Assembly (NCBI RefSeq): GCF_001194135.2
Contig: NC_069000.1
Coordinates: 3,100,972-3,164,971, forward strand
Length of the DNA stretch: 64,000 nucleotides
DNA from: Octopus bimaculoides
Taxonomy: Eukaryota
Direction: 5' to 3'
Both the position numbers and the translations under genes were made by a program. Numbering within the stretch: the first letter of the stretch is position 1; each line of letters starts with the position of its first letter. The notes beneath the pieces are model-generated. The model did not search any database. It was not told the origin of the DNA and saw nothing but the letters and a program-made list of their open reading frames with translations. Of this stretch, positions 616 to 59,175 are shown piece by piece.

Positions 616-1509
616 ACCTAGATCTAACTACACACCTAATCAAACCTAACCTGTTTATTCAGTATGTTCCTGTAAACTACTAGAATTTTAACACGCGTTG
701 TTTCAAACATATGGATCATTGACCTATCCCATGTAGTGATTCCAATACGATTCAATATTCTACTTACGTATTTCACTGGGAAAACTGAAAAGCCAAAATA
801 AACGCTACGATATTCGAATGTTGACGGAAACCTGTATCAAATACACACGCACAAATTTATGGTATCAAACTGTATACAGCAACCACAAATCCAGCGGTGG
901 CACCAGTAACTGTAAAAGCATAGGTCTGGCAATGTTCCTACCAAACGGAAAGACACAATTCCTACGAAAGCATTAATGCATAACGATTTATAAATACATG
1001 TTGAGAATATGGAAATCTGTAGGCTTGAAGCATAAATTAACTATCAATTGAAGCATGAACAATTTGGTAACACTCCAAGGAATATAAAAGCGAAATCGCT
1101 GAGTTGCAAAGATATTGTGCAAATTGCTCATGCATGACCGATTCAGACGGAATACATGTGTTTCGAAGAATTTCTGAGTAGTACAAGACGGAGTCAAAAT
1201 ACCACGTAACTCTCAAGAAAATGGTTAATTTAAGATATACGGCAGCGGTAAGTATAGTGAGATGGGCTTACATTGCAACTATGACGCATAAAATCAAGTT
1301 TAGTGTTTTCGTTCCAAATTTATACCAAAGTATTTACACTACACTGCGTCAGGTACATGCGTCCCCACCTCTTCTGCTATATATGCACACACGTGTGTGT
1401 ATGTTCGTCTACGAATATATACATAACGATATTTTACGAACGAAATATTTGTGTATAGAAACTCCATTTTCACTACTCCAATTCATGCGACCCAGATTTA
1501 TATGCAATT

Positions 1510-1675
1510 AGCGTATATAGATATATGACGGATTTCTTTCAGTTTCCGTTTACCAAATCCACTCACAAGGTCCGAGACTATAATAGACGACACTTTCCCA
1601 TGGTGCCACGCAGTGAGACTGAACCCGGAACCATGTGACTGAGAAGCAAGCTTCTTACCACACAGCCATATATAT
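1510..1675 (-). mobile_element. SINE family C (tRNA-like head and body)
   Basis: Reverse complement reads ggctgtgtggtaagaagcttgcttctcagtcacatggttccgggttcagtctcactgcgtggcacc...gagtggatttggtaaacggaaactgaaagaaatccgtcatata; homologous to 26560, 29405 and 59005. Confidence 0.85.
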
Positions 1676-2276
1676 GAATGTAGTTGGACAGAGAGAAATC
1701 TCACACAGAGGCAATTTCAGGATGGGGAAGAGGTGTGATCATGTCACAGATAGTGTTTCTCAGCAAACTCTGTCATCACTTTCTTCCAAAACATCCCTAC
1801 AATATATATACATAACCTAGAGATAAATTCATTTTATAGGAATTCCTCCTTCTCTCTAATATTCCAACCTCCCACTAACACTTATTAAGCTTCTTGTTTT
1901 GTCTACTCTCTCCCCCACCGTATATTTTCTTTGTTCTCTCTCTTTCTCTCTCTCTCTCTCTCTTTCCTTCCCACTGTGTCTTCCTCACTTTCTCTGTCTG
2001 TCGCGTCCGCATTCATATATGAGTGTTTACATTCTTTTACTCGGCAATCCAATATTCGCCCTTTTTAAAATTCCAATTTTTTCTTTATATCACAGTTCAT
2101 ATAGATTTTACTAATATCTTTTTCTAGCCTTCTAAACGCACACACATACCCACCGATACAGACAGATACAGACATACACACACACACACTCACACTCGCT
2201 CTATAAAGATAGTCTCTCGTAACACGAGACATTCGTGCAAGTGTTGCTGAAAAACCTGTACAAATGATTTGTTTGT

Positions 2277-11062: not shown

Positions 11063-13149
11063 TATATCTATACACTGAAGAATATATATTTAACAGTGAA
11101 GAACTTAGACAGAAAGAGCAAAACTAGGATGTGGGAAATAAGAAAATATGTGCTAAAACAAGGTTATTACTTGATGTTTTTTTCCTACATATAGTAAGTT
11201 CCTGTTCAGCTTCTGATGTGTAGCTTTATTATGATAAACACGTGTAGAATGAGCTTTAAAATACATTGAAACAATCCATTTCAGCAGGGAATTTAATTAT
11301 ACAACATCTTGATTTAGTTCTAAATGGTATTTTCTTTCACAGTATTTCATAAACCTCACATTGACTCTGCACTAAGGTTTTATATATTGTCCTACTTATT
11401 TCGCTCCTACAAGTGGGGAGCAGCTTTTGAAACTAATTCCGGTTTGACGGGATAAGAATGATAGCACAGATTCTTGTTCATTAGTTTTGTATAATCTGTT
11501 CAATCAGTTGTCTTATCACGTGGGTGTGTGTATGTATATATATATATATATATATNNNNNNNNNNNNNNNNNNNNNNNNNNNNNNNNNNNNNNNNNNNNN
11601 NNNNNNNNNNNNNNNNNNNNNNNNNNNNNNNNNNNNNNNNNNNNNNNNNNNNNNNNNNNNNNNNNNNNNNNNNNNNNNNNNNNNNNATATAAGGATATAT
11701 ATGTGTATGCGTATGCGCATGTTTATGCCTGTATGTGTATGTGTACGTCTCCTTCCGATCTACAAAATAATTTTACCAGAGCTAAAAAGGTGTCGTTAAT
11801 CACTGTTGCACCATTCATCAATCCTAGTTAAATATTTCAAAAATTTCAAATTCTACCAATGGGAGGGAACAGAATACGTATTTCTTCCAAATATATAATA
11901 AGGGTTGAATTCTGACCAATTTAAAATTCATACATCTTTTTCCTATTTTGTCCCAAATGTAATTTGTCATTCGGCAACCAAAGACAACAAGGATAAATTA
12001 GGAACTTTGTGTGCAATGGTAAATATTTAAAAGTACACGCGCCGCATGGATAGAGGCTCCGGAATATAGATTGCCGAATCATATCCAATGGTTTATGTTT
12101 TAAATACTTCCTATTATCTACCATTAGCTCCTTCTGTATTGATCGAACTTCTTAAGTCCCCTTCAACTTCCCTTGTCCCATTTTCCTCTTCTCTTTCGCA
12201 CACAGTTCTATCTTTTATCGATCTATCTAGAGTTTTTCTAACTATAGAGGTTACTTACTCCAATATCTATTTACATGCTGTTATTTATAGATTTGTCTAC
12301 TTGGAGTTTCACCTTTACAAATAAATAAAATGATTTTAAGCTCACTCGAAGTTTATAATTATTATGACTGCAACATACATACAAACACACACACATACAC
12401 ACACGCACACATATATATATGCATTCATACATATGTATTATTCGAATGCATAATTCGAATATATATGTAATTATTATGACTCAAACATACATACACATAG
12501 ATATATATACATGCATTCATACACACACATATGTATATCTTCGAATGCATGCATTGACACACATATGCGTGCGTGCGTTTGCATGTGTGTATATCATTAA
12601 GTGGATCCTGGTATAGAAACCAGTGCACGCAATGATATAAATCAAAAAGTTCTAAAGCTGAAGAACAGTATTTACCGCATTTAAGTTTACCATTTCAAGG
12701 TGTCTCTCATAAAAATGAGAGGAATGCTTTAAAATCTAGTTTCTTATTCTAATTCATATCAATATCTTAAGCATTCATGCAGAAAACCCCAACGCATATA
12801 CACATACATGAATATAAACATTTTATATCTTTCTATATCTTCCTACACATAACGTATGAGATCTGAACTTCTGAACTGAAATGTCGACAGGAAAATGCAC
12901 TTTAGATAGAGTTGATAGCTGAGAAGTCACAAGCGGTTTTCTTCTTTCTCATATGTGGTATTGAATTGGCATTACACACATACATAAATCTACAAAAGCA
13001 TACAAACACATACATTCATGCAGACACATCCATGTATGCAAGTATACTTACAGATACGATAGAAACATAATATATGCACATACGTATTAGCACACACACA
13101 CACACACACATATATATATGTATATATATATATATATATNNNNNNNNNN

Positions 13150-13550: not shown

Positions 13551-13888
13551 NNNNNNNNNNNNNNNNNNNNNNNNNNNNNNNNNNNNNNNNNNNNNNNNNN
13601 NNNNNNNNNNNNNNNNNNNNNNNNNNNNNNNNNNNNNNNNNNNNNNNNNNNNNNNNNNNNNNNNNNNNNNNNNNNNNNNNNNNNNNNNNNNNNNNNNNNN
13701 NNNNNNNNNNNNNNNNNNNNNNNNNNNNNNNNNNNNNNNNNNNNNNNNNNNNNNNNNNNNNNNNNNNNNNNNNNNNNNNNNNNNNNNNNNNNNNNNNNNN
13801 NNNNNNNNNNNNNNNNNNNNNNNNNNNNNNNNNNNNNNNNNNNNNNNNNNNNNNNNNNNNNNNNNNNNNNNNNNNNNNNNNNNNNNNN

Positions 13889-14289: not shown

Positions 14290-15330
14290 TGTAGATGATT
14301 ATTATTGTTTTTAATACTTTCGGTGCCGTCAACATTCTCGTGTCATCATTTTCATCACTGTCATCACCATTCGTCTCAGCCATCTCCCTCAACCTCGCCA
14401 TTGCAATAATCCCCACCATCGCAACCACTAGCGCTCTCATCATCATCAACTCCAGCATTTCTCTTCTCGTTTTCGTCTTCCATCTTATTATCATCCTCAT
14501 TATCGTTGCGAACATCATTATCGTCATCAATCACGATTACCTGCGCTTTCAATGTCCTCCTCACCACCTGCGTCACAACCCCGCTTCCACACCATTCAAT
14601 AATGTTATGTTTTCTAAAGTGTTTTCTTAAAACCTTGTTTTCTTAAAGATAAAGAGATATAAAGATTTGTTTTGTTTTGCAGAAATACCCCCCACCACCC
14701 ACCACATCGCGTACCATAAACATCATCATTACCATCATCCGTTGCGCCTCATCACCACCACCATTACCATTACCAACAACAACAAACGCATTACAATTAA
14801 TACAAGATTATCGTCAACACCACCACCACTATCAAGAGCAGCACTAATACCACTACATACATCAACCCTACTACTATACCCTTGCCACCACTTTCAGCAT
14901 TACCACCAGTAGCCTGCTCCTCATTGTCCGTCACGTGACGAGCCCTTTTTAATCTCCCACTGTCCTGTACTATTACCATCAGGACAATCATCATCACCAC
15001 CGCTATCACCGACTCTCCTACTGCTGCCGTCGGTGCCACCGCATTCGTCATTCTTCCTCTCTATCACATATAATGCATATACCGCCACCACCATCACCAT
15101 CACTAAGAACACCAGCACCTCTACCAGCAAAGCAGATGGTTGCCAACTTCGTGCTCAACATCAACGCCAGCACCATCACAATAGTAATCGCATTTACCAA
15201 TAGTAACGGTATCACTACCACTGAATGCAACTAATTTACCACCATTAGCAATAACACCAATGCTAATTAAAACTAGAGCATAAATTAAAGCTAGAGCATA
15301 TCCTGGAATTCCATCGGTGACGATGACAAG
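14290..15330. repeat. Cryptic trinucleotide low-complexity tract (CAT/CAC/ACC-rich)
   Basis: About 1 kb of degenerate catcatc/caccacc/accatt triplets. The His/Thr/Ile-rich and Asp/Gly/Val-rich ORFs on both strands are compositional artefacts. Confidence 0.7.
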
Positions 15331-15339
15331 GGTTCCAAT

Positions 15340-15556
15340 TGATCCAATCAACAAAACAGTCTGCTCCTGAAATTAAACTCAAGTGGCTGAGTAATCCACA
15401 GACACGTATACCTTTAACGTACTACTCAGTTTTGCCTGCTGGATGGAATGGAGCAACGTGAAATAAAGTGTCGTGCTCAAGGACATAACGCGTCGCGGAG
15501 AATCGAACTCACGACCTTACAACAATTAACCGAATACTCTAACAACTACACCACTG
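15340..15556 (-). mobile_element. SINE family B (internally deleted)
   Basis: aacagtctgctcctgaaattaaactcaagtggctgagtaatccacagacacg...ggagcaacgtgaaataaagtgtcgtgctcaaggacataacgcg...aatcgaactcacgacctt (reverse B-box); homologous to 33965-34262. Confidence 0.85.
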
Positions 15557-16309
15557 ACTTCAATACCACCTCTTCTGTCATACATACCATCTTTCCGACA
15601 TCCCCAATAAACATTCACGTACCACCAGTACTACATCACTACCATCTCCGATATTATCACCACTGCAATACATTGCCATCAAACTGAATGCGTTGAGCGC
15701 CGTTCTCACCTACACTCCCACCCCAAAATATAACCCCCCCCATCACCAACACTACCATCCATTAAAATAAACATCTCAATTTTAAATCTTTTTCATAAAT
15801 TTGTCCTTAATATTTTTTTGTTCTCATTTACCCTTTTTTTTTAGTTTTTCATTAAATTTTGATTGTTATTTTTTTTTTGATATTATAGATTAGATTGCTG
15901 TTATAGTTGCTGATGTTAAATAGTGCGTCGTTTTTTGCTATTATTGTTGAATAATGCTTCGTTGGTGCTGCTCTCTGGTTGCTGTTGTCGTTGTTACTGT
16001 TGTAGTTGCGTTTTATGCCGTCGTAGTTACAGATAGTGATATATGATGATGATGACGATATTCTTGATGTCATCGTTTTCATTCTTGTTGTTATTTCAAG
16101 ATACCGTTTTAAAATCGTTGCATTGTGAATTCTTCATAGTTGAATGCTTCTTTTTTTACGTTAGATGTACTCCTTTCATGGAAACCTGAATTCATAATTA
16201 AACGAACACATTCAATTTAAAAATATACACTCACAAACACACATAAAAACCAGCTTGGCCCTTTATTTACTCTTTACTATTTATTTGCCTTCTTGTTATT
16301 ATATTTGTT

Positions 16310-16549
16310 ACCGTCACCATCATCCTCATATCAGAAATAATCATTATTATCATTAATATCATCATCATCATTATTATAATCATCATCATTATTATCATTA
16401 AATCGGTAGTAACTGTTATTATTATTAGCGATATTGATGTTATTGTTCTTATTATTTCAGAAAACAGTATCGTTATTAACTTTATTATTACTGTTATTAT
16501 TATTCTGATATTTGTATCATTATTATATCAGAAATAATAATTATAATTG

Positions 16550-16580
<31 letters not shown>

Positions 16581-16630
16581 CATCATCATCATCATCATCG
16601 CCATCATTATTGTCACTATTATAATTAATT
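16310..16630. repeat. (ATT/ATC)n trinucleotide low-complexity tract
   Basis: Degenerate attattatcatcatc runs. Confidence 0.85.
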
Positions 16631-17330
16631 TGGGGTTCCTGCTTTCGCTTTTGTTTGTTTTATTTTGTTCTTTGTTTTTCACTAGGAAAGAAATTACATT
16701 CATTATTCTTAAAAAAAAAAGCGTCTATTCGTTCGTTAATTCATCGTTCATTCCGCTATTCTTTGCTTTTATTTTTGATTTAGTATCTGTGCTACCATTA
16801 GAAACTAATACGTGTTGATCATCATGGAATATATTCTTTCGTTCCGTCATTCATTCTTTTATTAAGAGTATTTACTTCTCCCATACTTAAATACATACAT
16901 ACATACGTACATTAAATAGATGATGGCCGCAAACTCGCGTTCGAGTATTGCCATCACTTCATCGAAAGTCCCAGACATGCGAGGGCTACGACCAGCCATT
17001 TTTGCAATAGGTCATACTTTTCTCTTTCAAGCGATGTCTGTGCCCGATGGTTTCTAATGTGGGGTGGGTGGGATTTGCACAAGTCCAATCCCCACTCTCT
17101 GAATATGGACAACATAAACTCTGAAAGAAGAACTAGTCTACATCATTGAACATTGTCAGAGTCACAGGTTTTCTCTCAGAGTTTCCCTTCCCCTGGCGAT
17201 ATGTTCTGACAACAACAGAGGGGCCTTCTACTCCCTGTGGAACAAACACGCGTTTGGACAGAAATCCAGGTATTTCCACATTCCCACGCATAAAAGGAGT
17301 CAACAAAATAGTCTTAAATTTACACATACA

Positions 17331-44792: not shown

Positions 44793-45412
44793 NNNNNNNN
44801 NNNNNNNNNNNNNNNNNNNNNNNNNNNNNNNNNNNNNNNNNNNNNNNNNNNNNNNNNNNNNNNNNNNNNNNNNNNNNNNNNNNNNNNNNNNNNNNNNNNN
44901 NNNNNNNNNNNNNNNNNNNNNNNNNNNNNNNNNNNNNNNNNNNNNNNNNNNNNNNNNNNNNNNNNNNNNNNNNNNNNNNNNNNNNNNNNNNNNNNNNNNN
45001 NNNNNNNNNNNNNNNNNNNNNNNNNNNNNNNNNNNNNNNNNNNNNNNNNNNNNNNNNNNNNNNNNNNNNNNNNNNNNNNNNNNNNNNNNNNNNNNNNNNN
45101 NNNNNNNNNNNNNNNNNNNNNNNNNNNNNNNNNNNNNNNNNNNNNNNNNNNNNNNNNNNNNNNNNNNNNNNNNNNNNNNNNNNNNNNNNNNNNNNNNNNN
45201 NNNNNNNNNNNNNNNNNNNNNNNNNNNNNNNNNNNNNNNNNNNNNNNNNNNNNNNNNNNTATATATATGCACTATGTGCCGATTATGCTTAATGCATCGA
45301 ACAAAATTAAATAAAAATGTATAATGTTCGGTAATGGTAAAATTCTCATTAAGTGTGACTCATATTTCTCCATTTATACGTCAGTGCATATATACTCATC
45401 ATAAGTGCGTGC

Positions 45413-46900: not shown

Positions 46901-46934
<34 letters not shown>

Positions 46935-47445
46935 NNNNNNNNNNNNNNNNNNNNNNNNNNNNNNNNNNNNNNNNNNNNNNNNNNNNNNNNNNNNNNNNNN
47001 NNNNNNNNNNNNNNNNNNNNNNNNNNNNNNNNNNNNNNNNNNNNNNNNNNNNNNNNNNNNNNNNNNNNNNNNNNNNNNNNNNNNNNNNNNNNNNNNNNNN
47101 NNNNNNNNNNNNNNNNNNNNNNNNNNNNNNNNNNNNNNNNNNNNNNNNNNNNNNNNNNNNNNNNNNNNNNNNNNNNNNNNNNNNNNNNNNNNNNNNNNNN
47201 NNNNNNNNNNNNNNNNNNNNNNNNNNNNNNNNNNNNNNNNNNNNNNNNNNNNNNNNNNNNNNNNNNNNNNNNNNNNNNNNNNNNNNNNNNNNNNNNNNNN
47301 NNNNNNNNNNNNNNNNNNNNNNNNNNNNNNNNNNNNNNNNNNNNNNNNNNNNNNNNNNNNNNNNNNNNNNNNNNNNNNNNNNNNNNNNNNNNNNNNNNNN
47401 NNNNNNNNNNNNNNNNNNNNNNNNNNNNNNNNNNNNNNNNNNNNA

Positions 47446-53231: not shown

Positions 53232-55120
53232 CTATGTGATAGATATTTGCCTTTGTAATGTTGCAGTGATCAATATGGCCAAGCGATTCAAACTGTGGAG
53301 TTGAAGAAAACTTGGGAACGTAAAGGAGAAGAGGAATAACTTTCAGAAAACTTTAATTAACAAGTTATCAAGTTCAATTCCACAAACCAGCGTGTCTCCA
53401 CCAAAGCAAAATAAAAAAAAAAAGAATGCATAAGATAATCACATTTGACGTTCATGCATATATTGTAATAATTTGGTATTAAGAACAAATACGAAATAAG
53501 TAAATTTTAACATTTGTTGAAAGCTTTTAATAAAAGGATTTCGCAGTATATTAATGACAACGTGATGCATGTTGATACCTATCTGTAATGGTGAATTTTT
53601 AGACTACACCAACGGATTTAATTAACGAAGGCTAAGACAGATAAATTTACGGAAACTGAAATCGACTCATTAACACTACAATTGCGCACAAGTGACCATT
53701 TTGTACATCGCAATTACATTCAGGTTTATGTCAGCACTATAAGCGAAAATTTGGTGTGCGTATGTATAAGCATTTTAATCTAGTTTTTATACGTAAATTT
53801 TTATAGCTTAATCTGCTTCGCGATTAACCGTTCTAAAAAGTAATTCTATCCTGTTCTCTCAGTTTCTAAATTATTACGATATTATACAAATCTCCCACGC
53901 ACGTACACGCATATATATATATATATATATATATATGCATGTATGTATACATACACTCTTCCCAGCAATATTCATCTGTATTTATGTGTGGAACTGTATT
54001 TATAACAATCTCTCTATGTATATGTGTATACCGGTAAACAAAATGTTGTTTTCCAATCCATTTTCTTTTGTTTTCCAATATTTCCAGTGTTAAATTTCAA
54101 ATCAATAACACTAGAAATATTTTATAAACTAAAAGTTGATTCAAAATAACAGCAAAAAGAAACCAGGAAAATGTAACAAAAATTATGAAATTTTAGATAT
54201 TCATCTTTATTGATCTGAATTCGAATTTCAGATATTTCTTCTTTATTTATTAAATATCGATTTAGTTTCTAATTTCTATTGCTGATTTCGTCTCAATCAA
54301 TTCCAAGTTATGGAAAGTCTTCCATTGTACAAATTTTGAAATTTCTTGAAATTAAAAGAAAATAAACTGTAGGAATATTTTTTTGTAAATGTATGTGGAA
54401 TACATACTTTCTGTCACAGACATACAGGTGCATAAATGAATGCAGGAATGTTTGTGCACACATGGGAAGATTATATAGGTGTGTATATGTGTGCAATATA
54501 CACATATACATAAAGGAAAATAGACAAATAAATAGATAGTGCTGAGGCTTTAAATTTTATTTCCTGTTACCACTTTGTGCTGTAGAAAACGTTGTCAATA
54601 GAAGTTCTGAAATAGTTTAGATTGGAGCTCAAACTTGGCATATGTTTACAAACTCTGCAATTTATATTCATAACATTTTTTAAAAAAGGATCATGCATCG
54701 AAATGTAAATTAACATATACTAACACAGACGCGCAAGGTGTGTTTTTGTAAATTTGGATTCAAACCTGGACCCTAAAAGCAAACGATACGGCCAAAGAGC
54801 AGTATCGATTCGAAGTTTTATGTAGATTGCAAGGTAATGGTTTCTGTCGTTATGCCTAACTCATCGTAAAGTGAAGACCAGCAGGAGTGACATCCAGGCT
54901 ATTGCAAAAAGGCAAGTCACTGGATTTGATTAAAACGAGACAATGAAATATGTCTAAAATAATATTGAGAGAAGTCTAGTAACCGGTTTATGTCGCAAAA
55001 TGCCGTCGAGGAAAGAACGCCGAAATGGCACGCATTCTCTCCTGATGATACTCATACGCTTGCTAGTGCCTTACATGCGGAGATTTGATATGGGAGCACT
55101 TGCATCTGCACGTTGTTCGG

Positions 55121-55155
<35 letters not shown>

Positions 55156-55265
55156 CGTATTATGTAAAATATTTGATTTCAATTCAAGTAATGAGGTAAC
55201 ATACTGCAATAAATTTAAGAAACAGTGAAAGCAACTGATAAAACAAACAGAAAATTGAGTAAATA

Positions 55266-55334
55266 ACTCACAGAGGCTTGCAGTAACACCTGAGTAAAAC
55301 AATTGGACTTACCTGAAAAAAAGAAGAGAAAAAA
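55266..55334 (-). other. Candidate recursive splice site (ratchet point) with a 41-nt cryptic RS-exon
   Basis: Minus strand: ttttttctcttcttttttt (19 pyrimidines), CAG|GTAAGT (junction 55313/55312), then CCTCT|GTGAGT 41 nt after the junction (donor 55271-55266). Confidence 0.45.
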
Positions 55335-56144
55335 TTCATAAAATACTTCCATATAAATAGGCAATGATAAAAATTGACATTGTTTCAATATTTAAAAATT
55401 CCTATGACATGTTCAGTAACAGTGGTTTGATAAATATATTAAGAATTTACGTAGCAGATAAATTAAGTACATGTTCTTGCATAGGAGCGAGAGAATTCAG
55501 CGCAGTTACTTGGATGCAGGCGTTTTGGCACGGTTAACCTTTCAGCATTTAAACTATTTTGGCGAAGGATTTTTTGGCATGGGAAGTAAGCACCCACGTG
55601 CATGCTTGCATGAGAAATATAGATAGATAGATAGAAATATAGATAGATAGATAGAAATATAGATAGATGCGTAGAAAGAAAGAGGAAAGAGAAATTACAA
55701 TTTATTTGTGATGCCGATTAACATAAACACGGTCGCTTTCTTCGAAGGCTCGAAGAGAAATAGGTTCACAGAGAGACAGAGAGAAAAGGAGAAAGAAGAA
55801 ATAGATAGAGAGGGGGAATGGGTGAGATACATGTGGAGACTATGATAAATATTTTCACGGTACTAAATATTCACGGATACATAAGGTCTAATGTCAAACA
55901 TGTCAGCGTCGAATTAGAGATGCCAGTGAGGCAGGAACAACATGGTTGCATCAGAGCCTCTTTTAGACTTCTCACATCCATAAGCTAACTATAATGGTGT
56001 TAACAGATGCTGTACAATTAATGGTATAACAATGTTTAATGTAACTAATACCAATATTTTTCTGGAGCATCCTTGGATGTCTTTAGAAATGTGATAGTTA
56101 TGTAATTCATAATTTAATTGATACATATTATTTTTTTTCTTTTT

Positions 56145-56490
56145 CACTCATTTGGATGCGGACATGAAGGGCCAGTGGAAATTGTTCCATTAGTTTTTTT
56201 TTACAGAACTGGGAAGTAACGCGGACGTAAATATACCAACAACGGTTGTCAAGTAGTTGTGGGATACAAACACAAGTACAATCCCCACTACCGCACACGC
56301 ACATACATCACACACAAACGCAATACACACAAATATATACACACACTCAATATATACAAACACACACGACAGGATTCTCCCTCCTCAAAATCTACTCACA
56401 AGTCTTTGGTTGGCTAGAGACCAAACTAGAAAACACTACCCAAGATTCCACGAAAAGTCACTGAGCCCGGGACTATGTGACTGACAACCA
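56145..56490 (-). mobile_element. Composite SINE: family C head/body, CA-rich spacer and family D tail
   Basis: D part: tcatttggatgcggacatg...ggacgtaaatataccaacaacggttgtcaag...caaacacaag. CA-rich spacer at about 56276-56362. C part: acgacaggattctc...aaatctactcacaagtctttggttggc...gagcccgggactatgtg. Confidence 0.7.
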
Positions 56491-57784
56491 CAGTTATTTA
56501 TACATCCAAAAATTATGATAGGGTTGCACACGATTTCTGCTACAATATCTGGACAGTCTTTGCATACATTCTCAAAATCAGCAATATGAAAATGCAATGC
56601 AATATCGTCCTACCCACTCCCCTTGATCCACTGAAGAACCTTCTATAAATTCCGGCCCATCTAAGCGGAAAGGATATAACTGCTATTTCACAGTTTACGT
56701 GACCGTAGACTCTCACTCCTCTGTTGTGAACTATTTGAAAGCATAGTACATTTACTCAAGCCATTCCGACATAGAATTTTGCGTCTTCTTGTAGTATTGC
56801 ACTGAACTGAAATTTCAATGGAAGTTGTGGAGTCTTACCAACATTGAATGAATTTTAGATATGGATGCAGAACATAAAATTATTGATCTACGAAGTCTCA
56901 GAATGCTGGAGATATTGTAGGGAATTCCATCACCATATCACTATGCAATAAAATTTCCTCAGCATGAATATTTCATAACAAATTTATAAATATTTTTAAA
57001 GTATATCTTAATAATTTACTACCGCCTTTCACTGTAATATCCTTTTCGATATACCCCTAAAATTGGAGCGTGTCCGGTGTAGCAAAAACTGACGAAAAGC
57101 AGGAGAGAGGCATGTATGGCATTATTACCTCATATACTAATAAGATTTTTAAAGCGGAACTAAGAATATGCATATTGCATCGCAGATTTTATAGAATTTA
57201 TAAACCTAATAAATTCATAAAATTTGTATGCAGAAAAATGATTTTGTCGTTTAAGTGTTTGGGGTTTTTAAATGGAATTTATAGGCGTAGGAGCATGTTT
57301 AGAAATTCTCCTTTCACGCTATGTTGGTGACTCCATTTATTGAGTTGAACAGGATATTCATTAAACAATTACATGGGTTTCCTACAAATATTTCAAATGG
57401 ATGCACGATAAATATGAATGTCATGCATGTGCAGATAAATATGGCGGATCGATAAACTTGAGCGATAGATTGAATAAACGGGAGATATGAAAGGATATTT
57501 AATATCTGTGTCTTGTTATCATGTGAGTTAACCCTTTTAACAACGATAGATTATTTAAGTAAATAAGTTAGGGAGGAAACAGATAACTAAAGATACGAAA
57601 AGTGAATAAAGAGAAGCATAAAGATAGAGATGTAATGAGAGTAGTGAAGTGAGTGATTGTTAAGATGTGTAAGTGTAAAATGTCTTGATACAGCTTCATG
57701 ATGAACACAATTATTCCTTTGAATGTGTAAGCATCACGGCGTTTGATGAACCGGACATCCGACACATCGAATCGACGGGAGGTG

Positions 57785-57823
<39 letters not shown>

Positions 57824-58965
57824 TTGTAAGTATATGATTTTGGGAGTTTATATAATTGTAAGTGTCTGGTTGCGTGTTTTGGTGCGCCGGCAATGTTTAT
57901 CAGTGAAGAATGTTCAAAGATTTAAGAAACCAAAAACGCCAAGACAAGTGCATTTCCGCACAATGCTCCGTGCACTATTTCATCTGTGCAAAGACGAATA
58001 CACTTCCAAGTCATTATTTCATTGCAAACATGCAGCAAAACACTGGTTGGCCTATTAAAAAACTTATCCAATAAAGTTCTTGTCCATTAGTTGCGATATG
58101 AAGCGAAAAATGTGTTCTTGAAACTTAAGTGAAACTCGACAGAATATTGGGAAATATATTGATTATTAATAACGAAACAAGCTGTTAATTTGGTGTAAAT
58201 GTGTGTGTGTGTGTGTGTGGAGGGGAGATTAGCAATCTGTGGAATCGACTGAAGTAATTAGCGGGTCATTATTATATTGATACCCGGTTGATGGAAGACA
58301 ACGATAAGATCGACCGTATTTTCACTCTGCACTCTCCCCGTGTGTATGTATGTGTGTGTATATANNNNNNNNNNNNNNNNNNNNNNNNNNNNNNNNNNNN
58401 NNNNNNNNNNNNNNNNNNNNNNNNNNNNNNNNNNNNNNNNNNNNNNNNNNNNNNNNNNNNNNNNNNNNNNNNNNNNNNNNNNNNNNNNNNNNNNNNNNNN
58501 NNNNNNNNNNNNNNNNNNNNNNNNNNNNNNNNNNNNNNNNNNNNNNNNNNNNNNNNNNNNNNNNNNNNNNNNNNNNNNNNNNNNNNNNNNNNNNNNNNNN
58601 NNNNNNNNNNNNNNNNNNNNNNNNNNNNNNNNNNNNNNNNNNNNNNNNNNNNNNNNNNNNNNNNNNNNNNNNNNNNNNNNNNNNNNNNNNNNNNNNNNNN
58701 NNNNNNNNNNNNNNNNNNNNNNNNNNNNNNNNNNNNNNNNNNNNNNNNNNNNNNNNNNNNNNNNNNNNNNNNNNNNNNNNNNNNNNNNNNNNNNNNNNNN
58801 NNNNNNNNNNNNNNNNNNNNNNNNNNNNNNNNNNNNNNNNNNNNNNNNNNNNNNNNNNNNNNNNNNNNNNNNNNNNNNNNNNNNNNNNNNNNNNNNNNNN
58901 NNNNNNNNNNNNNNNNNNNNNNNNNNNNNNNNNNNNNNNNNNNNNNNNNNNNNNNNNNNNNNNNN

Positions 58966-59004
<39 letters not shown>

Positions 59005-59009
<5 letters not shown>

Positions 59010-59175
59010 GACGGGCTTCTTTCAGCCTCTATCTATCAAATCCACTCCCAAGTCTTTGGTCGGCCCGTGGCTATAGTAGAAGACGCTTGCTCAAGGTGGC
59101 ACGCACTAGGACAGACTCCGGAACCATGTGGCTGGTAAGCAAGCAACTTACCACACAGCCACTTCTGCGCCTATA
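59005..59175 (-). mobile_element. SINE family C, well preserved
   Basis: tatacgacgggcttctttcag...aaatccactcccaagtctttggtcggcccgtggctatagtagaagacgcttgctcaaggtggcacgc...ggaaccatgtggctggtaagcaagcaacttaccacacagccac. Confidence 0.9.

What the first reader, a model, noticed from the sequence alone, without database searches (positions are those of the whole stretch)
55266..55334. Candidate recursive splice site with a cryptic 41-nt RS-exon
Seen on the minus strand: an uninterrupted 19-nt polypyrimidine tract, then CAG immediately followed by a perfect GTAAGT, and a second consensus donor (CCTCT|GTGAGT) 41 nt downstream. It is the only strong polypyrimidine-AG|GTAAGT site I found by eye on either strand. 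Established: in Drosophila and vertebrate long introns, ratchet points are 3' splice sites that regenerate a 5' splice site, and they are defined by a short cryptic exon ending at a downstream donor. Inference: the window lies in a giant intron of a minus-strand gene that is removed stepwise. I am not aware of recursive splicing being described in cephalopods, but could not check the literature. One motif could be chance or an ordinary 41-nt exon.
Basis: partly seen in the sequence, partly recalled or inferred. Interest (0 to 1): 0.75.

Follow-up and report, generated by a model that had tools for sequence, protein, structure and literature searches.

The report
Textbook recursive-splice-site motif, usage untested
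On the minus strand there is a near-perfect "ratchet point" (an intron-end signal fused to an intron-start signal, with a second intron-start signal 41 bases on). It is far too good to be chance in this window and looks just like the sites flies use to remove giant introns in steps, but no tool here could show that it lies in a transcribed intron or is ever spliced.

Summary
On the minus strand, 20 uninterrupted pyrimidines (55334-55315) end in CAG (AG 55314-55313). GTAAGT follows directly (55312-55307), and GTGAGT lies 41 nt downstream (55271-55266). It is the only such site on either strand: its combined splice-site score is 22.8 bits, against 12.5 for the next AG|GT. Markov-model nulls give 0.0025-0.0075 relaxed sites per window, and a donor 20-60 nt downstream has p about 0.017.

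Most single-sequence hallmarks of Drosophila-type ratchet points are met; donor strength order is inconclusive:
- (Y)nNCAG|GTAAGT
- TT at -5/-6
- an AG-free zone of 32 nt
- a branch-point candidate at -27
- a short, out-of-frame cryptic exon

The locus is unique within the window and not inside the SINE copies found.

The defining evidence could not be obtained. No exon, protein homolog, Pfam domain or strand asymmetry identifies a host gene or its strand, and no RNA data or other cephalopod genomes were available. The organism itself could not be verified.

My estimate is about 40% a real recursive site, about 35% an unused chance motif, and the rest an ordinary exon or donor. If real, it is a new member of a known kind in an unstudied clade. 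No paper in the library links recursive splicing with octopus or molluscs.

The parts
55338..55342 (-). Candidate branch point TTTAT (yUnAy), with the A at 55339, which is -27 from the splice junction
   Evidence: It is the only yTnAy match downstream of the last upstream AG (G at 55346, position -34). The match is weak and common in AT-rich DNA.
55315..55334 (-). Polypyrimidine tract of 20 uninterrupted pyrimidines, including the C at -3, with TT at -5/-6
   Evidence: It is the only AG in the window with 20 of 20 upstream pyrimidines. No AG occurs between -34 and the acceptor.
55313..55314 (-). AG of the putative recursive 3' splice site (acceptor score 14.2 bits)
55307..55312 (-). GTAAGT: the 5' splice site that would be regenerated once an upstream exon is joined at 55312
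   Evidence: CAG|GTAAGT ranks 1st of 7438 GT sites in the window.
55272..55312 (-). Putative cryptic 41-nt RS-exon. Its length is not a multiple of 3, one frame has TAA, and it contains an internal weak AG|GT at 55290/55289.
   Evidence: for length and frames. Searches found no protein homolog of the reading frames that cross it.
55266..55271 (-). Downstream donor TCT|GTGAGT, which would define the RS-exon (5.4 bits, rank 361 of 7438 GT sites)
   Evidence: The chance of a GTRAGT falling 20-60 nt downstream is 0.017.

Best explanation
This is an intronic ratchet point, that is, a recursive splice site of the fly type, on the minus strand.

Inferred mechanism:
1. The element is first recognised by exon definition as a 41-nt cryptic exon. 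U2AF and U2 bind the 20-nt pyrimidine tract, the AG and a branch point near 55339. U1 binds the GTGAGT at 55271.
2. The upstream exon of a long minus-strand transcript is ligated to position 55312. This removes the upstream part of the intron as a lariat.
3. Ligation creates ...AG|GTAAGT, a near-optimal donor.
4. That donor out-competes the weaker TCT|GTGAGT donor, so the 41 nt and the rest of the intron are removed in the next step and leave no trace in the mRNA.
5. If the 41 nt were included, they would shift the reading frame.

Shown here: the sequence anatomy and its improbability by chance. Inferred: every RNA-level step, the existence and strand of the host transcript, and the giant intron.
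For: - The site matches the published consensus (y)nncag|gtaagt exactly (consensus quoted from PMC2773006; sequence).
- TT at -5/-6 is present, as in 196 of 197 Drosophila ratchet points (Duff preprint).
- A short cryptic exon ending at a downstream donor, poorly coding and out of frame, is what PMC8605326 describes (about 50 nt). Here it is 41 nt.
- The donor order is right if the upstream exon ends in the usual (M)AG: 11.8-12.8 bits against 5.4 bits.
- The 32 nt before the acceptor AG contain no other AG, and a yUnAy match sits at -27.
- The site is an extreme outlier, 22.8 bits against 12.5 for the next AG|GT.
- The null expectation is at most 0.0025-0.0075 per window, times 0.017 for the second donor.
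- The locus is unique within the window, has no terminal inverted repeats and lies outside the SINE copies.
- At least 8.7 kb on the 5' side and 55 kb on the 3' side carry no detectable coding sequence, which fits a very long intron.
- Literature prior: motif-defined RP sites are 4-22 times enriched on the sense strand of introns over 50 kb in four insects and a sea urchin (PMC2773006, Table 2).
Against: - No host gene, exon or transcription strand was found, so the locus may be intergenic.
- No strand asymmetry appears in base skews, poly(A) signals or U1-type hexamers.
- There is no second RS-like site in 64 kb on either strand, whereas long fly introns often carry several.
- The genome is rich in SINEs and simple repeats. 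In that respect it resembles vertebrates, whose large introns show no RP-motif enrichment (ratio 0.9-1.5; PMC2773006).
- The branch-point match is weak.
- The donor competition depends on an unknown upstream exon. With TTT|GTAAGT it would score only 3.8 bits.
- One motif in one genome carries an unknown look-elsewhere factor.
Confidence: 0.4

Rival explanations
1. Chance motif with no function. A T-rich tract happens to abut CAGGTAAGT in non-transcribed DNA, on the antisense strand of a gene, or in an intron where it is ignored or used only stochastically.
For: - No gene, transcript polarity or conservation could be shown.
- AGGTRAGT alone is at expectation: 2 observed against 1.3-3.2 simulated.
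- T-rich tracts are common here: 59 runs of T>=8 over both strands, and 4 runs of Y>=15 followed by AG.
- Extrapolating the null to an assumed genome of about 2.7 Gb gives about 1-25 such composites by chance, depending on stringency.
- In vertebrate large introns most RP-like motifs are no more frequent than on the complementary strand (PMC2773006).
Against: - The per-window probability is at most 0.0025-0.0075 for the relaxed motif, and about 4e-5 to 1e-4 with the second donor.
- Most accessory features agree at once: TT at -5/-6, the AG-free zone, the branch-point candidate and a short out-of-frame exon. Donor order is untested.
- The site is 10 bits above the next-best AG|GT.
Confidence: 0.35
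2. An ordinary or alternatively included 41-nt exon that happens to begin with GTAAGT. It could be a cassette exon, a poison exon, a non-coding exon, or an 'expressed RS-exon' of an unannotated minus-strand transcript. It would appear in mature RNA rather than being removed.
For: - A strong acceptor (14.2 bits) and a usable donor (5.4 bits, top 5% of GT sites) lie 41 nt apart, which is an exon-definition unit.
- Two of the three frames are open.
- Mammalian genomes are reported to hold thousands of expressed RS-exons and only a few fully suppressed ratchet points (PMC8605326).
Against: - Translations across the segment have no protein homolog in 5.8 billion sequences or in 1.84 billion representatives, and no Pfam hit.
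- 41 nt breaks the reading frame.
- A regenerated AG|GTAAGT donor would normally beat TCT|GTGAGT (the competition principle is from PMC8605326).
Confidence: 0.15
3. An ordinary 5' splice site. CAG|GTAAGT would simply be the donor of an upstream, pyrimidine-rich, non-coding exon, for example a short first or 5'-UTR exon. The T-tract would then be exonic rather than an acceptor tract.
For: - CAG|GTAAGT is also the canonical donor 9-mer.
- Two frames stay open for about 25 codons upstream.
- A TATA-like TATTTATAT lies about 40 nt upstream, at 55358-55350.
Against: - No promoter-like CpG or GC feature is nearby; CpG o/e is flat at 0.8-1.0.
- TATA-like strings are abundant in DNA with 33% GC.
- The nearest upstream AG (the G is 33 nt upstream of the splice-site G) has a poor acceptor context.
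- This reading does not explain the second donor 41 nt downstream or the exact acceptor geometry.
Confidence: 0.05

Closest known systems
Drosophila intronic ratchet points (zero-nucleotide exons with cryptic RS-exons; e.g. Ubx, kuz, Bx, luna)
   Same: - A tandem acceptor|donor that matches (Y)nNCAG|GTAAGT.
- TT at -5/-6.
- A short cryptic exon (about 50 nt; here 41 nt) ending at a second, apparently weaker donor, with out-of-frame, non-coding content.
- Surroundings free of exons for tens of kilobases.
(PMC8605326; Duff preprint)
   Different: - Fly sites are defined by junction reads, saw-tooth coverage, lariats and ultraconservation. None of these is available here.
- The host gene and its strand are unknown.
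- Only one site lies in 64 kb.
- The genome context is repeat-rich, unlike fly introns.
Vertebrate recursive sites with RS-exons (Sibley et al. 2015, as summarised in PMC5126111 and PMC8605326)
   Same: - A YAG|GT core.
- Recognition by exon definition through a downstream donor.
- Inclusion of the RS-exon would disrupt the reading frame, so it would be a target for nonsense-mediated decay.
- A large, SINE-rich genome.
   Different: - Vertebrate sites sit in very long, mostly neuronal genes and were found from RNA data.
- Motif matches alone are not enriched in vertebrate large introns (PMC2773006), so the motif predicts little there.
- The acceptor and donor here are closer to the stringent fly consensus.
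Motif-level enrichment of RP sites in other invertebrates (mosquito, bee, beetle, sea urchin; Shepard et al. 2009, PMC2773006)
   Same: This too is a purely computational call from the combined consensus in a non-model invertebrate genome. That paper shows such motifs are 4-22 times enriched on the sense strand of introns over 50 kb.
   Different: That evidence is statistical, drawn from hundreds of annotated introns. Here there is a single site without annotation. No mollusc was in that study.
Zero-length exon / pseudo-exon of rat tropomyosin (Grellscheid & Smith 2006, as cited in PMC2773006)
   Same: It is an intronic element flanked by real splice signals. It can act both as a zero-length exon and as an alternative exon that triggers nonsense-mediated decay.
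   Different: That element serves to regulate an exon rather than to subdivide a giant intron. It was shown experimentally.

Membership tests
Intronic ratchet point / recursive splice site | [quoted passage not shown] | tested here: met
   One search shows 20 pyrimidines, then CAG|GTAAGT. The score is 22.8 bits against 12.5 for the next AG|GT. The consensus is quoted from PMC2773006.
Intronic ratchet point / recursive splice site | TT at positions -5 and -6 of the acceptor (196 of 197 fly ratchet points) | tested here: met
   ...TTTTCAG|, with T at -4, -5 and -6. The criterion is from the Duff preprint.
Intronic ratchet point / recursive splice site | A short cryptic RS-exon (about 50 nt) ending at a downstream donor, which allows exon definition | tested here: met
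   GTGAGT lies 41 nt downstream. The probability by chance is 0.017. The criterion is from PMC8605326.
Intronic ratchet point / recursive splice site | The regenerated ratchet-point donor is stronger than the RS-exon donor, so the cryptic exon is skipped | tested here: inconclusive
   xAG|GTAAGT scores 11.8-12.8 bits against 5.4 bits for TCT|GTGAGT. The -3 to -1 bases come from an unknown upstream exon, and the worst case, TTT|GTAAGT, scores 3.8 bits. The weight matrix is generic and was not trained on this species.
Intronic ratchet point / recursive splice site | Cryptic exon content is non-coding and out of frame | tested here: met
   41 nt is not a multiple of 3, and one frame has TAA. No homolog or domain was found.
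Intronic ratchet point / recursive splice site | Lies deep in a long intron (over 10-20 kb), on the sense strand of the host gene | tested here: inconclusive
   No coding exon was detected on either strand in 64 kb, and there is no strand polarity. This is compatible with an intron of at least 64 kb or with intergenic DNA. Short exons (reading frames under 52-57 aa) and non-coding exons would have been missed.
Intronic ratchet point / recursive splice site | The acceptor|donor core is more conserved across species than its flanks | not testable with these tools
   No eukaryotic genome collection is available. Indirect attempts found nothing: plus a metagenome scan for the 28-mer.
Intronic ratchet point / recursive splice site | RNA intermediates: upstream-exon-to-ratchet-point junction reads, saw-tooth nascent coverage, and lariats to and from the site | not testable with these tools
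Ordinary coding cassette exon | An open frame with protein homology that preserves the reading frame | tested here: not met
   A length of 41 nt breaks the frame. Frames crossing the segment have no homologs and no Pfam hit.
Dispersed repeat / transposable element carrying the motif | Additional copies, terminal repeats, or transposable-element protein domains | tested here: not met
   Within the window there are no other copies (blastn), no terminal inverted repeats or MITE structure, and no overlap with the five SINE copies. Genome-wide copy number could not be tested.

The most novel reading that the evidence does not exclude
This is a functioning recursive splice site in a cephalopod (a lophotrochozoan). 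That would be the first outside insects and vertebrates with a defined site. It would imply that ratchet-point splicing through cryptic RS-exons is ancestral to Bilateria and is used to process the very long introns of cephalopod genes.
Probability: 0.35. Interest if true: 0.5.

Novelty: new member of a known kind. Interest (0 to 1): 0.3.

Why it matters
Recursive splicing has been shown experimentally in Drosophila and in vertebrates. Motif enrichment suggests it also occurs in other insects and a sea urchin (PMC2773006). The held library has no paper linking it to octopus or molluscs.

Cephalopods combine a large, repeat-rich genome with very long genes and elaborate RNA processing. A validated ratchet point there would bear on two questions: whether stepwise intron removal is a general bilaterian solution to giant introns, and whether fly-type "invisible" sites or vertebrate-type expressed RS-exons predominate.

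On its own, one unverified motif is only a lead. Its main value is as a precise, cheap target for RT-PCR or RNA-seq, and as a prompt for a genome-wide sense-versus-antisense motif count.

Tried and rejected
1. Finding the locus or its orthologs through spurious reading frames in public assemblies.
- Two exact look-ups found nothing.
- A homology search with 39 concatenated frames from 54311-56147 (frames overlapping 54500-56100) found nothing.
- A full HMMER scan of the frame crossing the site against 1.84 billion representatives found nothing.

2. Finding host-gene exons or transposable-element proteins anywhere in the window.
- Concatenated high-complexity frames gave no hits: minus strand, at least 52 aa; plus strand, at least 57 aa; Pfam on both.
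- Caveats: the queries were concatenated, the search uses a word prefilter, there was no positive control, and short or non-coding exons are invisible to this approach.

3. Rfam and tRNA scans found nothing. The plus-strand ACTTACCTG, which is complementary to the donor and resembles the 5' end of U1 snRNA, is not a U1 gene.

4. Strand polarity of transcription. Masked AT and GC skews, AATAAA/ATTAAA counts, GTRAGT counts and SINE orientation (2 plus, 3 minus) show no signal.

5. CpG observed/expected is flat at about 0.9, with no island and no sign of gene-body methylation.

6. A naive acceptor-donor pairing scan gave similar numbers of pseudo-exons on both strands and was uninformative.

7. 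A scan of metagenome contigs for the 28-mer across the site gave 0 hits.

8. A literature search for the SINE core sequence, meant to confirm the organism, gave 0 hits.

9. The 347-nt "perfect inverted repeat" at 30600-30946 / 46901-47247 was rejected as an artefact of N runs plus (TA)n.

Full report
**1. Observation**

Read on the minus strand, the sequence is ...TATGAA-TTTTTTCTCTTCTTTTTTT-CAG|GTAAGTCCAATTGTTTTACTCAGGTGTTACTGCAAGCCTCT|GTGAGTTA...

- The pyrimidine run covers 55334-55315: 19 nt plus the C of CAG, 20 in all and uninterrupted.
- The AG is at 55314-55313 and GTAAGT at 55312-55307.
- The second donor, GTGAGT, is at 55271-55266.
- The segment between the two donors (55312-55272) is 41 nt.

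**2. Is it more than chance?**

- Over both strands the window holds 6205 AG, about 277 AG|GT and 58 GTRAGT, but only two AG|GTRAGT. The other one (+45846) has no pyrimidine tract.
- Only 23 AGs have at least 17 of 20 pyrimidines upstream. This site is the only one with 20 of 20.
- I scored sites with a generic metazoan acceptor-plus-donor weight matrix. Its frequencies come from textbook knowledge and were not trained on this species. The site scores 22.8 bits and the next AG|GT on either strand scores 12.5.
- Strand-symmetric Markov models of order 3 and 5, trained on the window, give 0.0025-0.0075 sites per simulated window for a relaxed definition (Y>=12 + AG|GTRAGT). They give at most 0.0025 for Y>=15 and none for the observed configuration. 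Reversed-sequence controls give none.
- A GTRAGT falls 20-60 nt downstream of a random position with p = 0.017.
- The composite therefore has an expectation of about 4e-5 to 1e-4 per window.

This is clearly non-random at window scale. If the source is a genome of about 2.7 Gb (my assumption), roughly 1-5 strict or about 25 relaxed composites are still expected by chance genome-wide. I do not know how many windows the first stage read.

**3. Fine anatomy against published criteria**

- Shepard et al. quote the ratchet-point consensus as (y)nncag|gtaagt (PMC2773006). The match here is exact.
- Duff et al. report TT at -5/-6 in 196 of 197 fly ratchet points. Here -4 to -6 are all T.
- Joseph and Lai (PMC8605326) describe fly ratchet points as follows. 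They are a tandem acceptor/donor that encompasses a short cryptic RS-exon of about 50 nt. [quoted passage not shown] The ratchet-point donor out-competes the RS-exon donor.
- Here the cryptic exon is 41 nt, so it breaks the frame, and one frame has TAA.
- Its donor, TCT|GTGAGT, scores 5.4 bits (rank 361 of 7438 GT sites). A regenerated (C/A)AG|GTAAGT scores 11.8-12.8 bits (rank 1). This comparison depends on the unknown last three bases of the upstream exon.
- The nearest upstream AG is at -34, and a yUnAy branch-point candidate (TTTAT, A at 55339) lies at -27, inside the AG-free zone.
- Most single-sequence criteria are therefore met; the donor strength order is inconclusive.

**4. Is it part of a repeat?**

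- blastn of 54900-55750 and of the 221-nt core against the whole window finds only short chance matches.
- No inverted terminal repeats or tandem structure enclose the site.
- The site sits in unique sequence between a (TA)16 microsatellite (55123-55154) and an (ATAG)n / 20-mer repeat (55613-55668).
- The window contains five diverged copies of a tRNA-derived SINE. The nearest is at about 56350-56520, and none overlaps the site.
- Genome-wide copy number could not be tested.

**5. Gene context**

This is the crux, and it stayed unresolved.

- The window has 33-35% GC, about 10% simple repeats and eleven N gaps, mostly flanked by (TA)n.
- It has no Rfam family and no tRNA, and no clean long reading frame.
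- Exact look-ups of two reading frames spanning the site found nothing.
- Four searches gave no hit at all:
  - all frames of at least 28 aa overlapping 54500-56100;
  - all high-complexity minus-strand frames of at least 52 aa;
  - all high-complexity plus-strand frames of at least 57 aa;
  - Pfam on both sets.
- A full HMMER scan of the frame crossing the site against 1.84 billion representatives also found nothing.
- So there is no recognisable coding exon or transposable-element protein on either strand in 64 kb.
- That is what a giant intron would look like: at least 8.7 kb on the 5' side and 55 kb on the 3' side of the site. An intergenic desert would look the same.
- Caveats: the queries were concatenations passed through a word prefilter, there was no positive control, and short or non-coding exons would be missed.
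- Indirect indicators of transcription direction are flat:
  - masked AT and GC skews are about 0;
  - AATAAA plus ATTAAA is 141 on the plus strand against 121 on the minus strand;
  - GTRAGT is 31 against 27;
  - SINE orientation is 2 against 3.
- CpG observed/expected is about 0.9 throughout, with no island.
- No second RS-like site exists in the window.

**6. Organism**

The composition, the (TA)n-flanked scaffold gaps and the tRNA-SINE are compatible with a large invertebrate genome. From memory, the SINE consensus resembles the abundant octopus SINE, but that is a lead and not a test. A literature search for its core sequence found nothing.

**7. Prior from the literature**

Shepard et al. 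(PMC2773006, Table 2) counted motif-defined RP sites per 100 kb in introns over 50 kb against their complementary strands:

| Species | Sense | Antisense | Ratio |
|---|---|---|---|
| Fruit fly | 2.20 | 0.10 | 21.7x |
| Mosquito | 1.03 | 0 | - |
| Beetle | 0.81 | 0.10 | 8x |
| Sea urchin | 0.54 | 0.07 | 8.2x |
| Bee | 0.48 | 0.12 | 4x |
| Eight vertebrates | - | - | 0.9-1.5x |

No mollusc was included.

- If cephalopods behave like the other invertebrates, a strong sense-strand motif in a long intron is more likely selected than accidental.
- If they behave like vertebrates, whose SINE-rich large genomes they resemble, the motif predicts little.
- I combined this with a rough one-in-three chance that a random location is intronic (my assumption) and with the exceptional strength of this site.
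- My estimates are about 0.4 for a genuine recursive site, about 0.35 for an unused chance motif, about 0.15 for an ordinary or alternatively included 41-nt exon, and about 0.05 for a plain donor of a pyrimidine-rich upstream exon.

**8. Mechanism proposed (inferred, not shown)**

1. The 41-nt unit is recognised by exon definition. U2AF and U2 bind the 20-nt tract, the AG and the branch point near 55339. U1 binds GTGAGT at 55271.
2. The upstream exon is ligated to 55312 and the first intron segment is released as a lariat.
3. Ligation regenerates ...AG|GTAAGT.
4. The regenerated donor is used in preference to TCT|GTGAGT, so the 41 nt and the downstream intron segment are removed together.
5. 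Rare use of the second donor would include a frame-shifting 41-nt exon and trigger nonsense-mediated decay.

**9. Novelty and literature**

In the held library, "recursive splicing" co-occurs with "cephalopod" in one paper, once each and in passing. It does not co-occur with "octopus" or "mollusc" in any paper. Recursive splicing has been studied in flies, mammals and lungfish.

If validated, this would be a new member of a known kind in an unstudied clade. That would be useful but not very surprising, given the invertebrate motif enrichment already published. As it stands it is a well-formed, cheaply testable candidate.

**10. Verdict**

- Interest is modest.

Noticed in passing
window 29400-29620 (+), 26600-26760 (+), 58950-59175 (-), 1500-1690 (-), 56350-56520 (-): Five diverged copies (about 72-76% identity) of one tRNA-derived SINE. 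It has A/B-box-like motifs (TGGCTGTGTGG ... GGTTCCGGGTTCAGTCC) and a (TA)n tail. Its body contains CTTGTGAGTGG, so two of the five minus-strand GTRAGT hexamers between 50 and 60 kb come from SINE copies. From memory it resembles the abundant octopus SINE, but I could not verify this.
   Followed up: partly
window 11556-11686, 13551-13888, 29616-29926, 30600-30911, 44793-45259, 46935-47444, 58365-58965 and four shorter runs: Eleven runs of N (2768 nt in total), mostly flanked by (TA)n. These are scaffold gaps at microsatellites. The '347-nt, 100% complementary inverted repeat' at 30600-30946 / 46901-47247 reported by the repeat finder is an artefact of N runs plus (TA)n.
   Followed up: yes
window about 14300-16650: A block rich in trinucleotide repeats (ATT/ATC/GTT-type runs). 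It has the highest GC content in the window (0.41) and a strong C-over-G skew on the plus strand (GC skew -0.34). Its long low-complexity reading frames have no homologs.
   Followed up: partly
window 35071-35198: A tandem array of about 8 copies of a 16-nt G-rich unit (GGGGGAGAGAGCGTGA-like), 88-96% identical between copies.
   Followed up: no
window 55613-55668: A 20-nt tandem repeat (AGAAATATAGATAGATAGAT, 2.8 copies) embedded in (ATAG)n, lying 300 nt on the 5' side of the candidate site on the minus strand.
   Followed up: no
window 55288-55291 (minus strand): Inside the 41-nt segment there is a second, weak AG|GT (ttttactcAG|GTgtta). It is probably incidental.
   Followed up: no
whole window: CpG observed/expected is about 0.9 (0.74-1.04 per 4 kb), with no CpG island. 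So the window shows no CpG depletion of the kind expected for germline-methylated gene bodies. About 10% of the window is simple-sequence repeat.
   Followed up: partly
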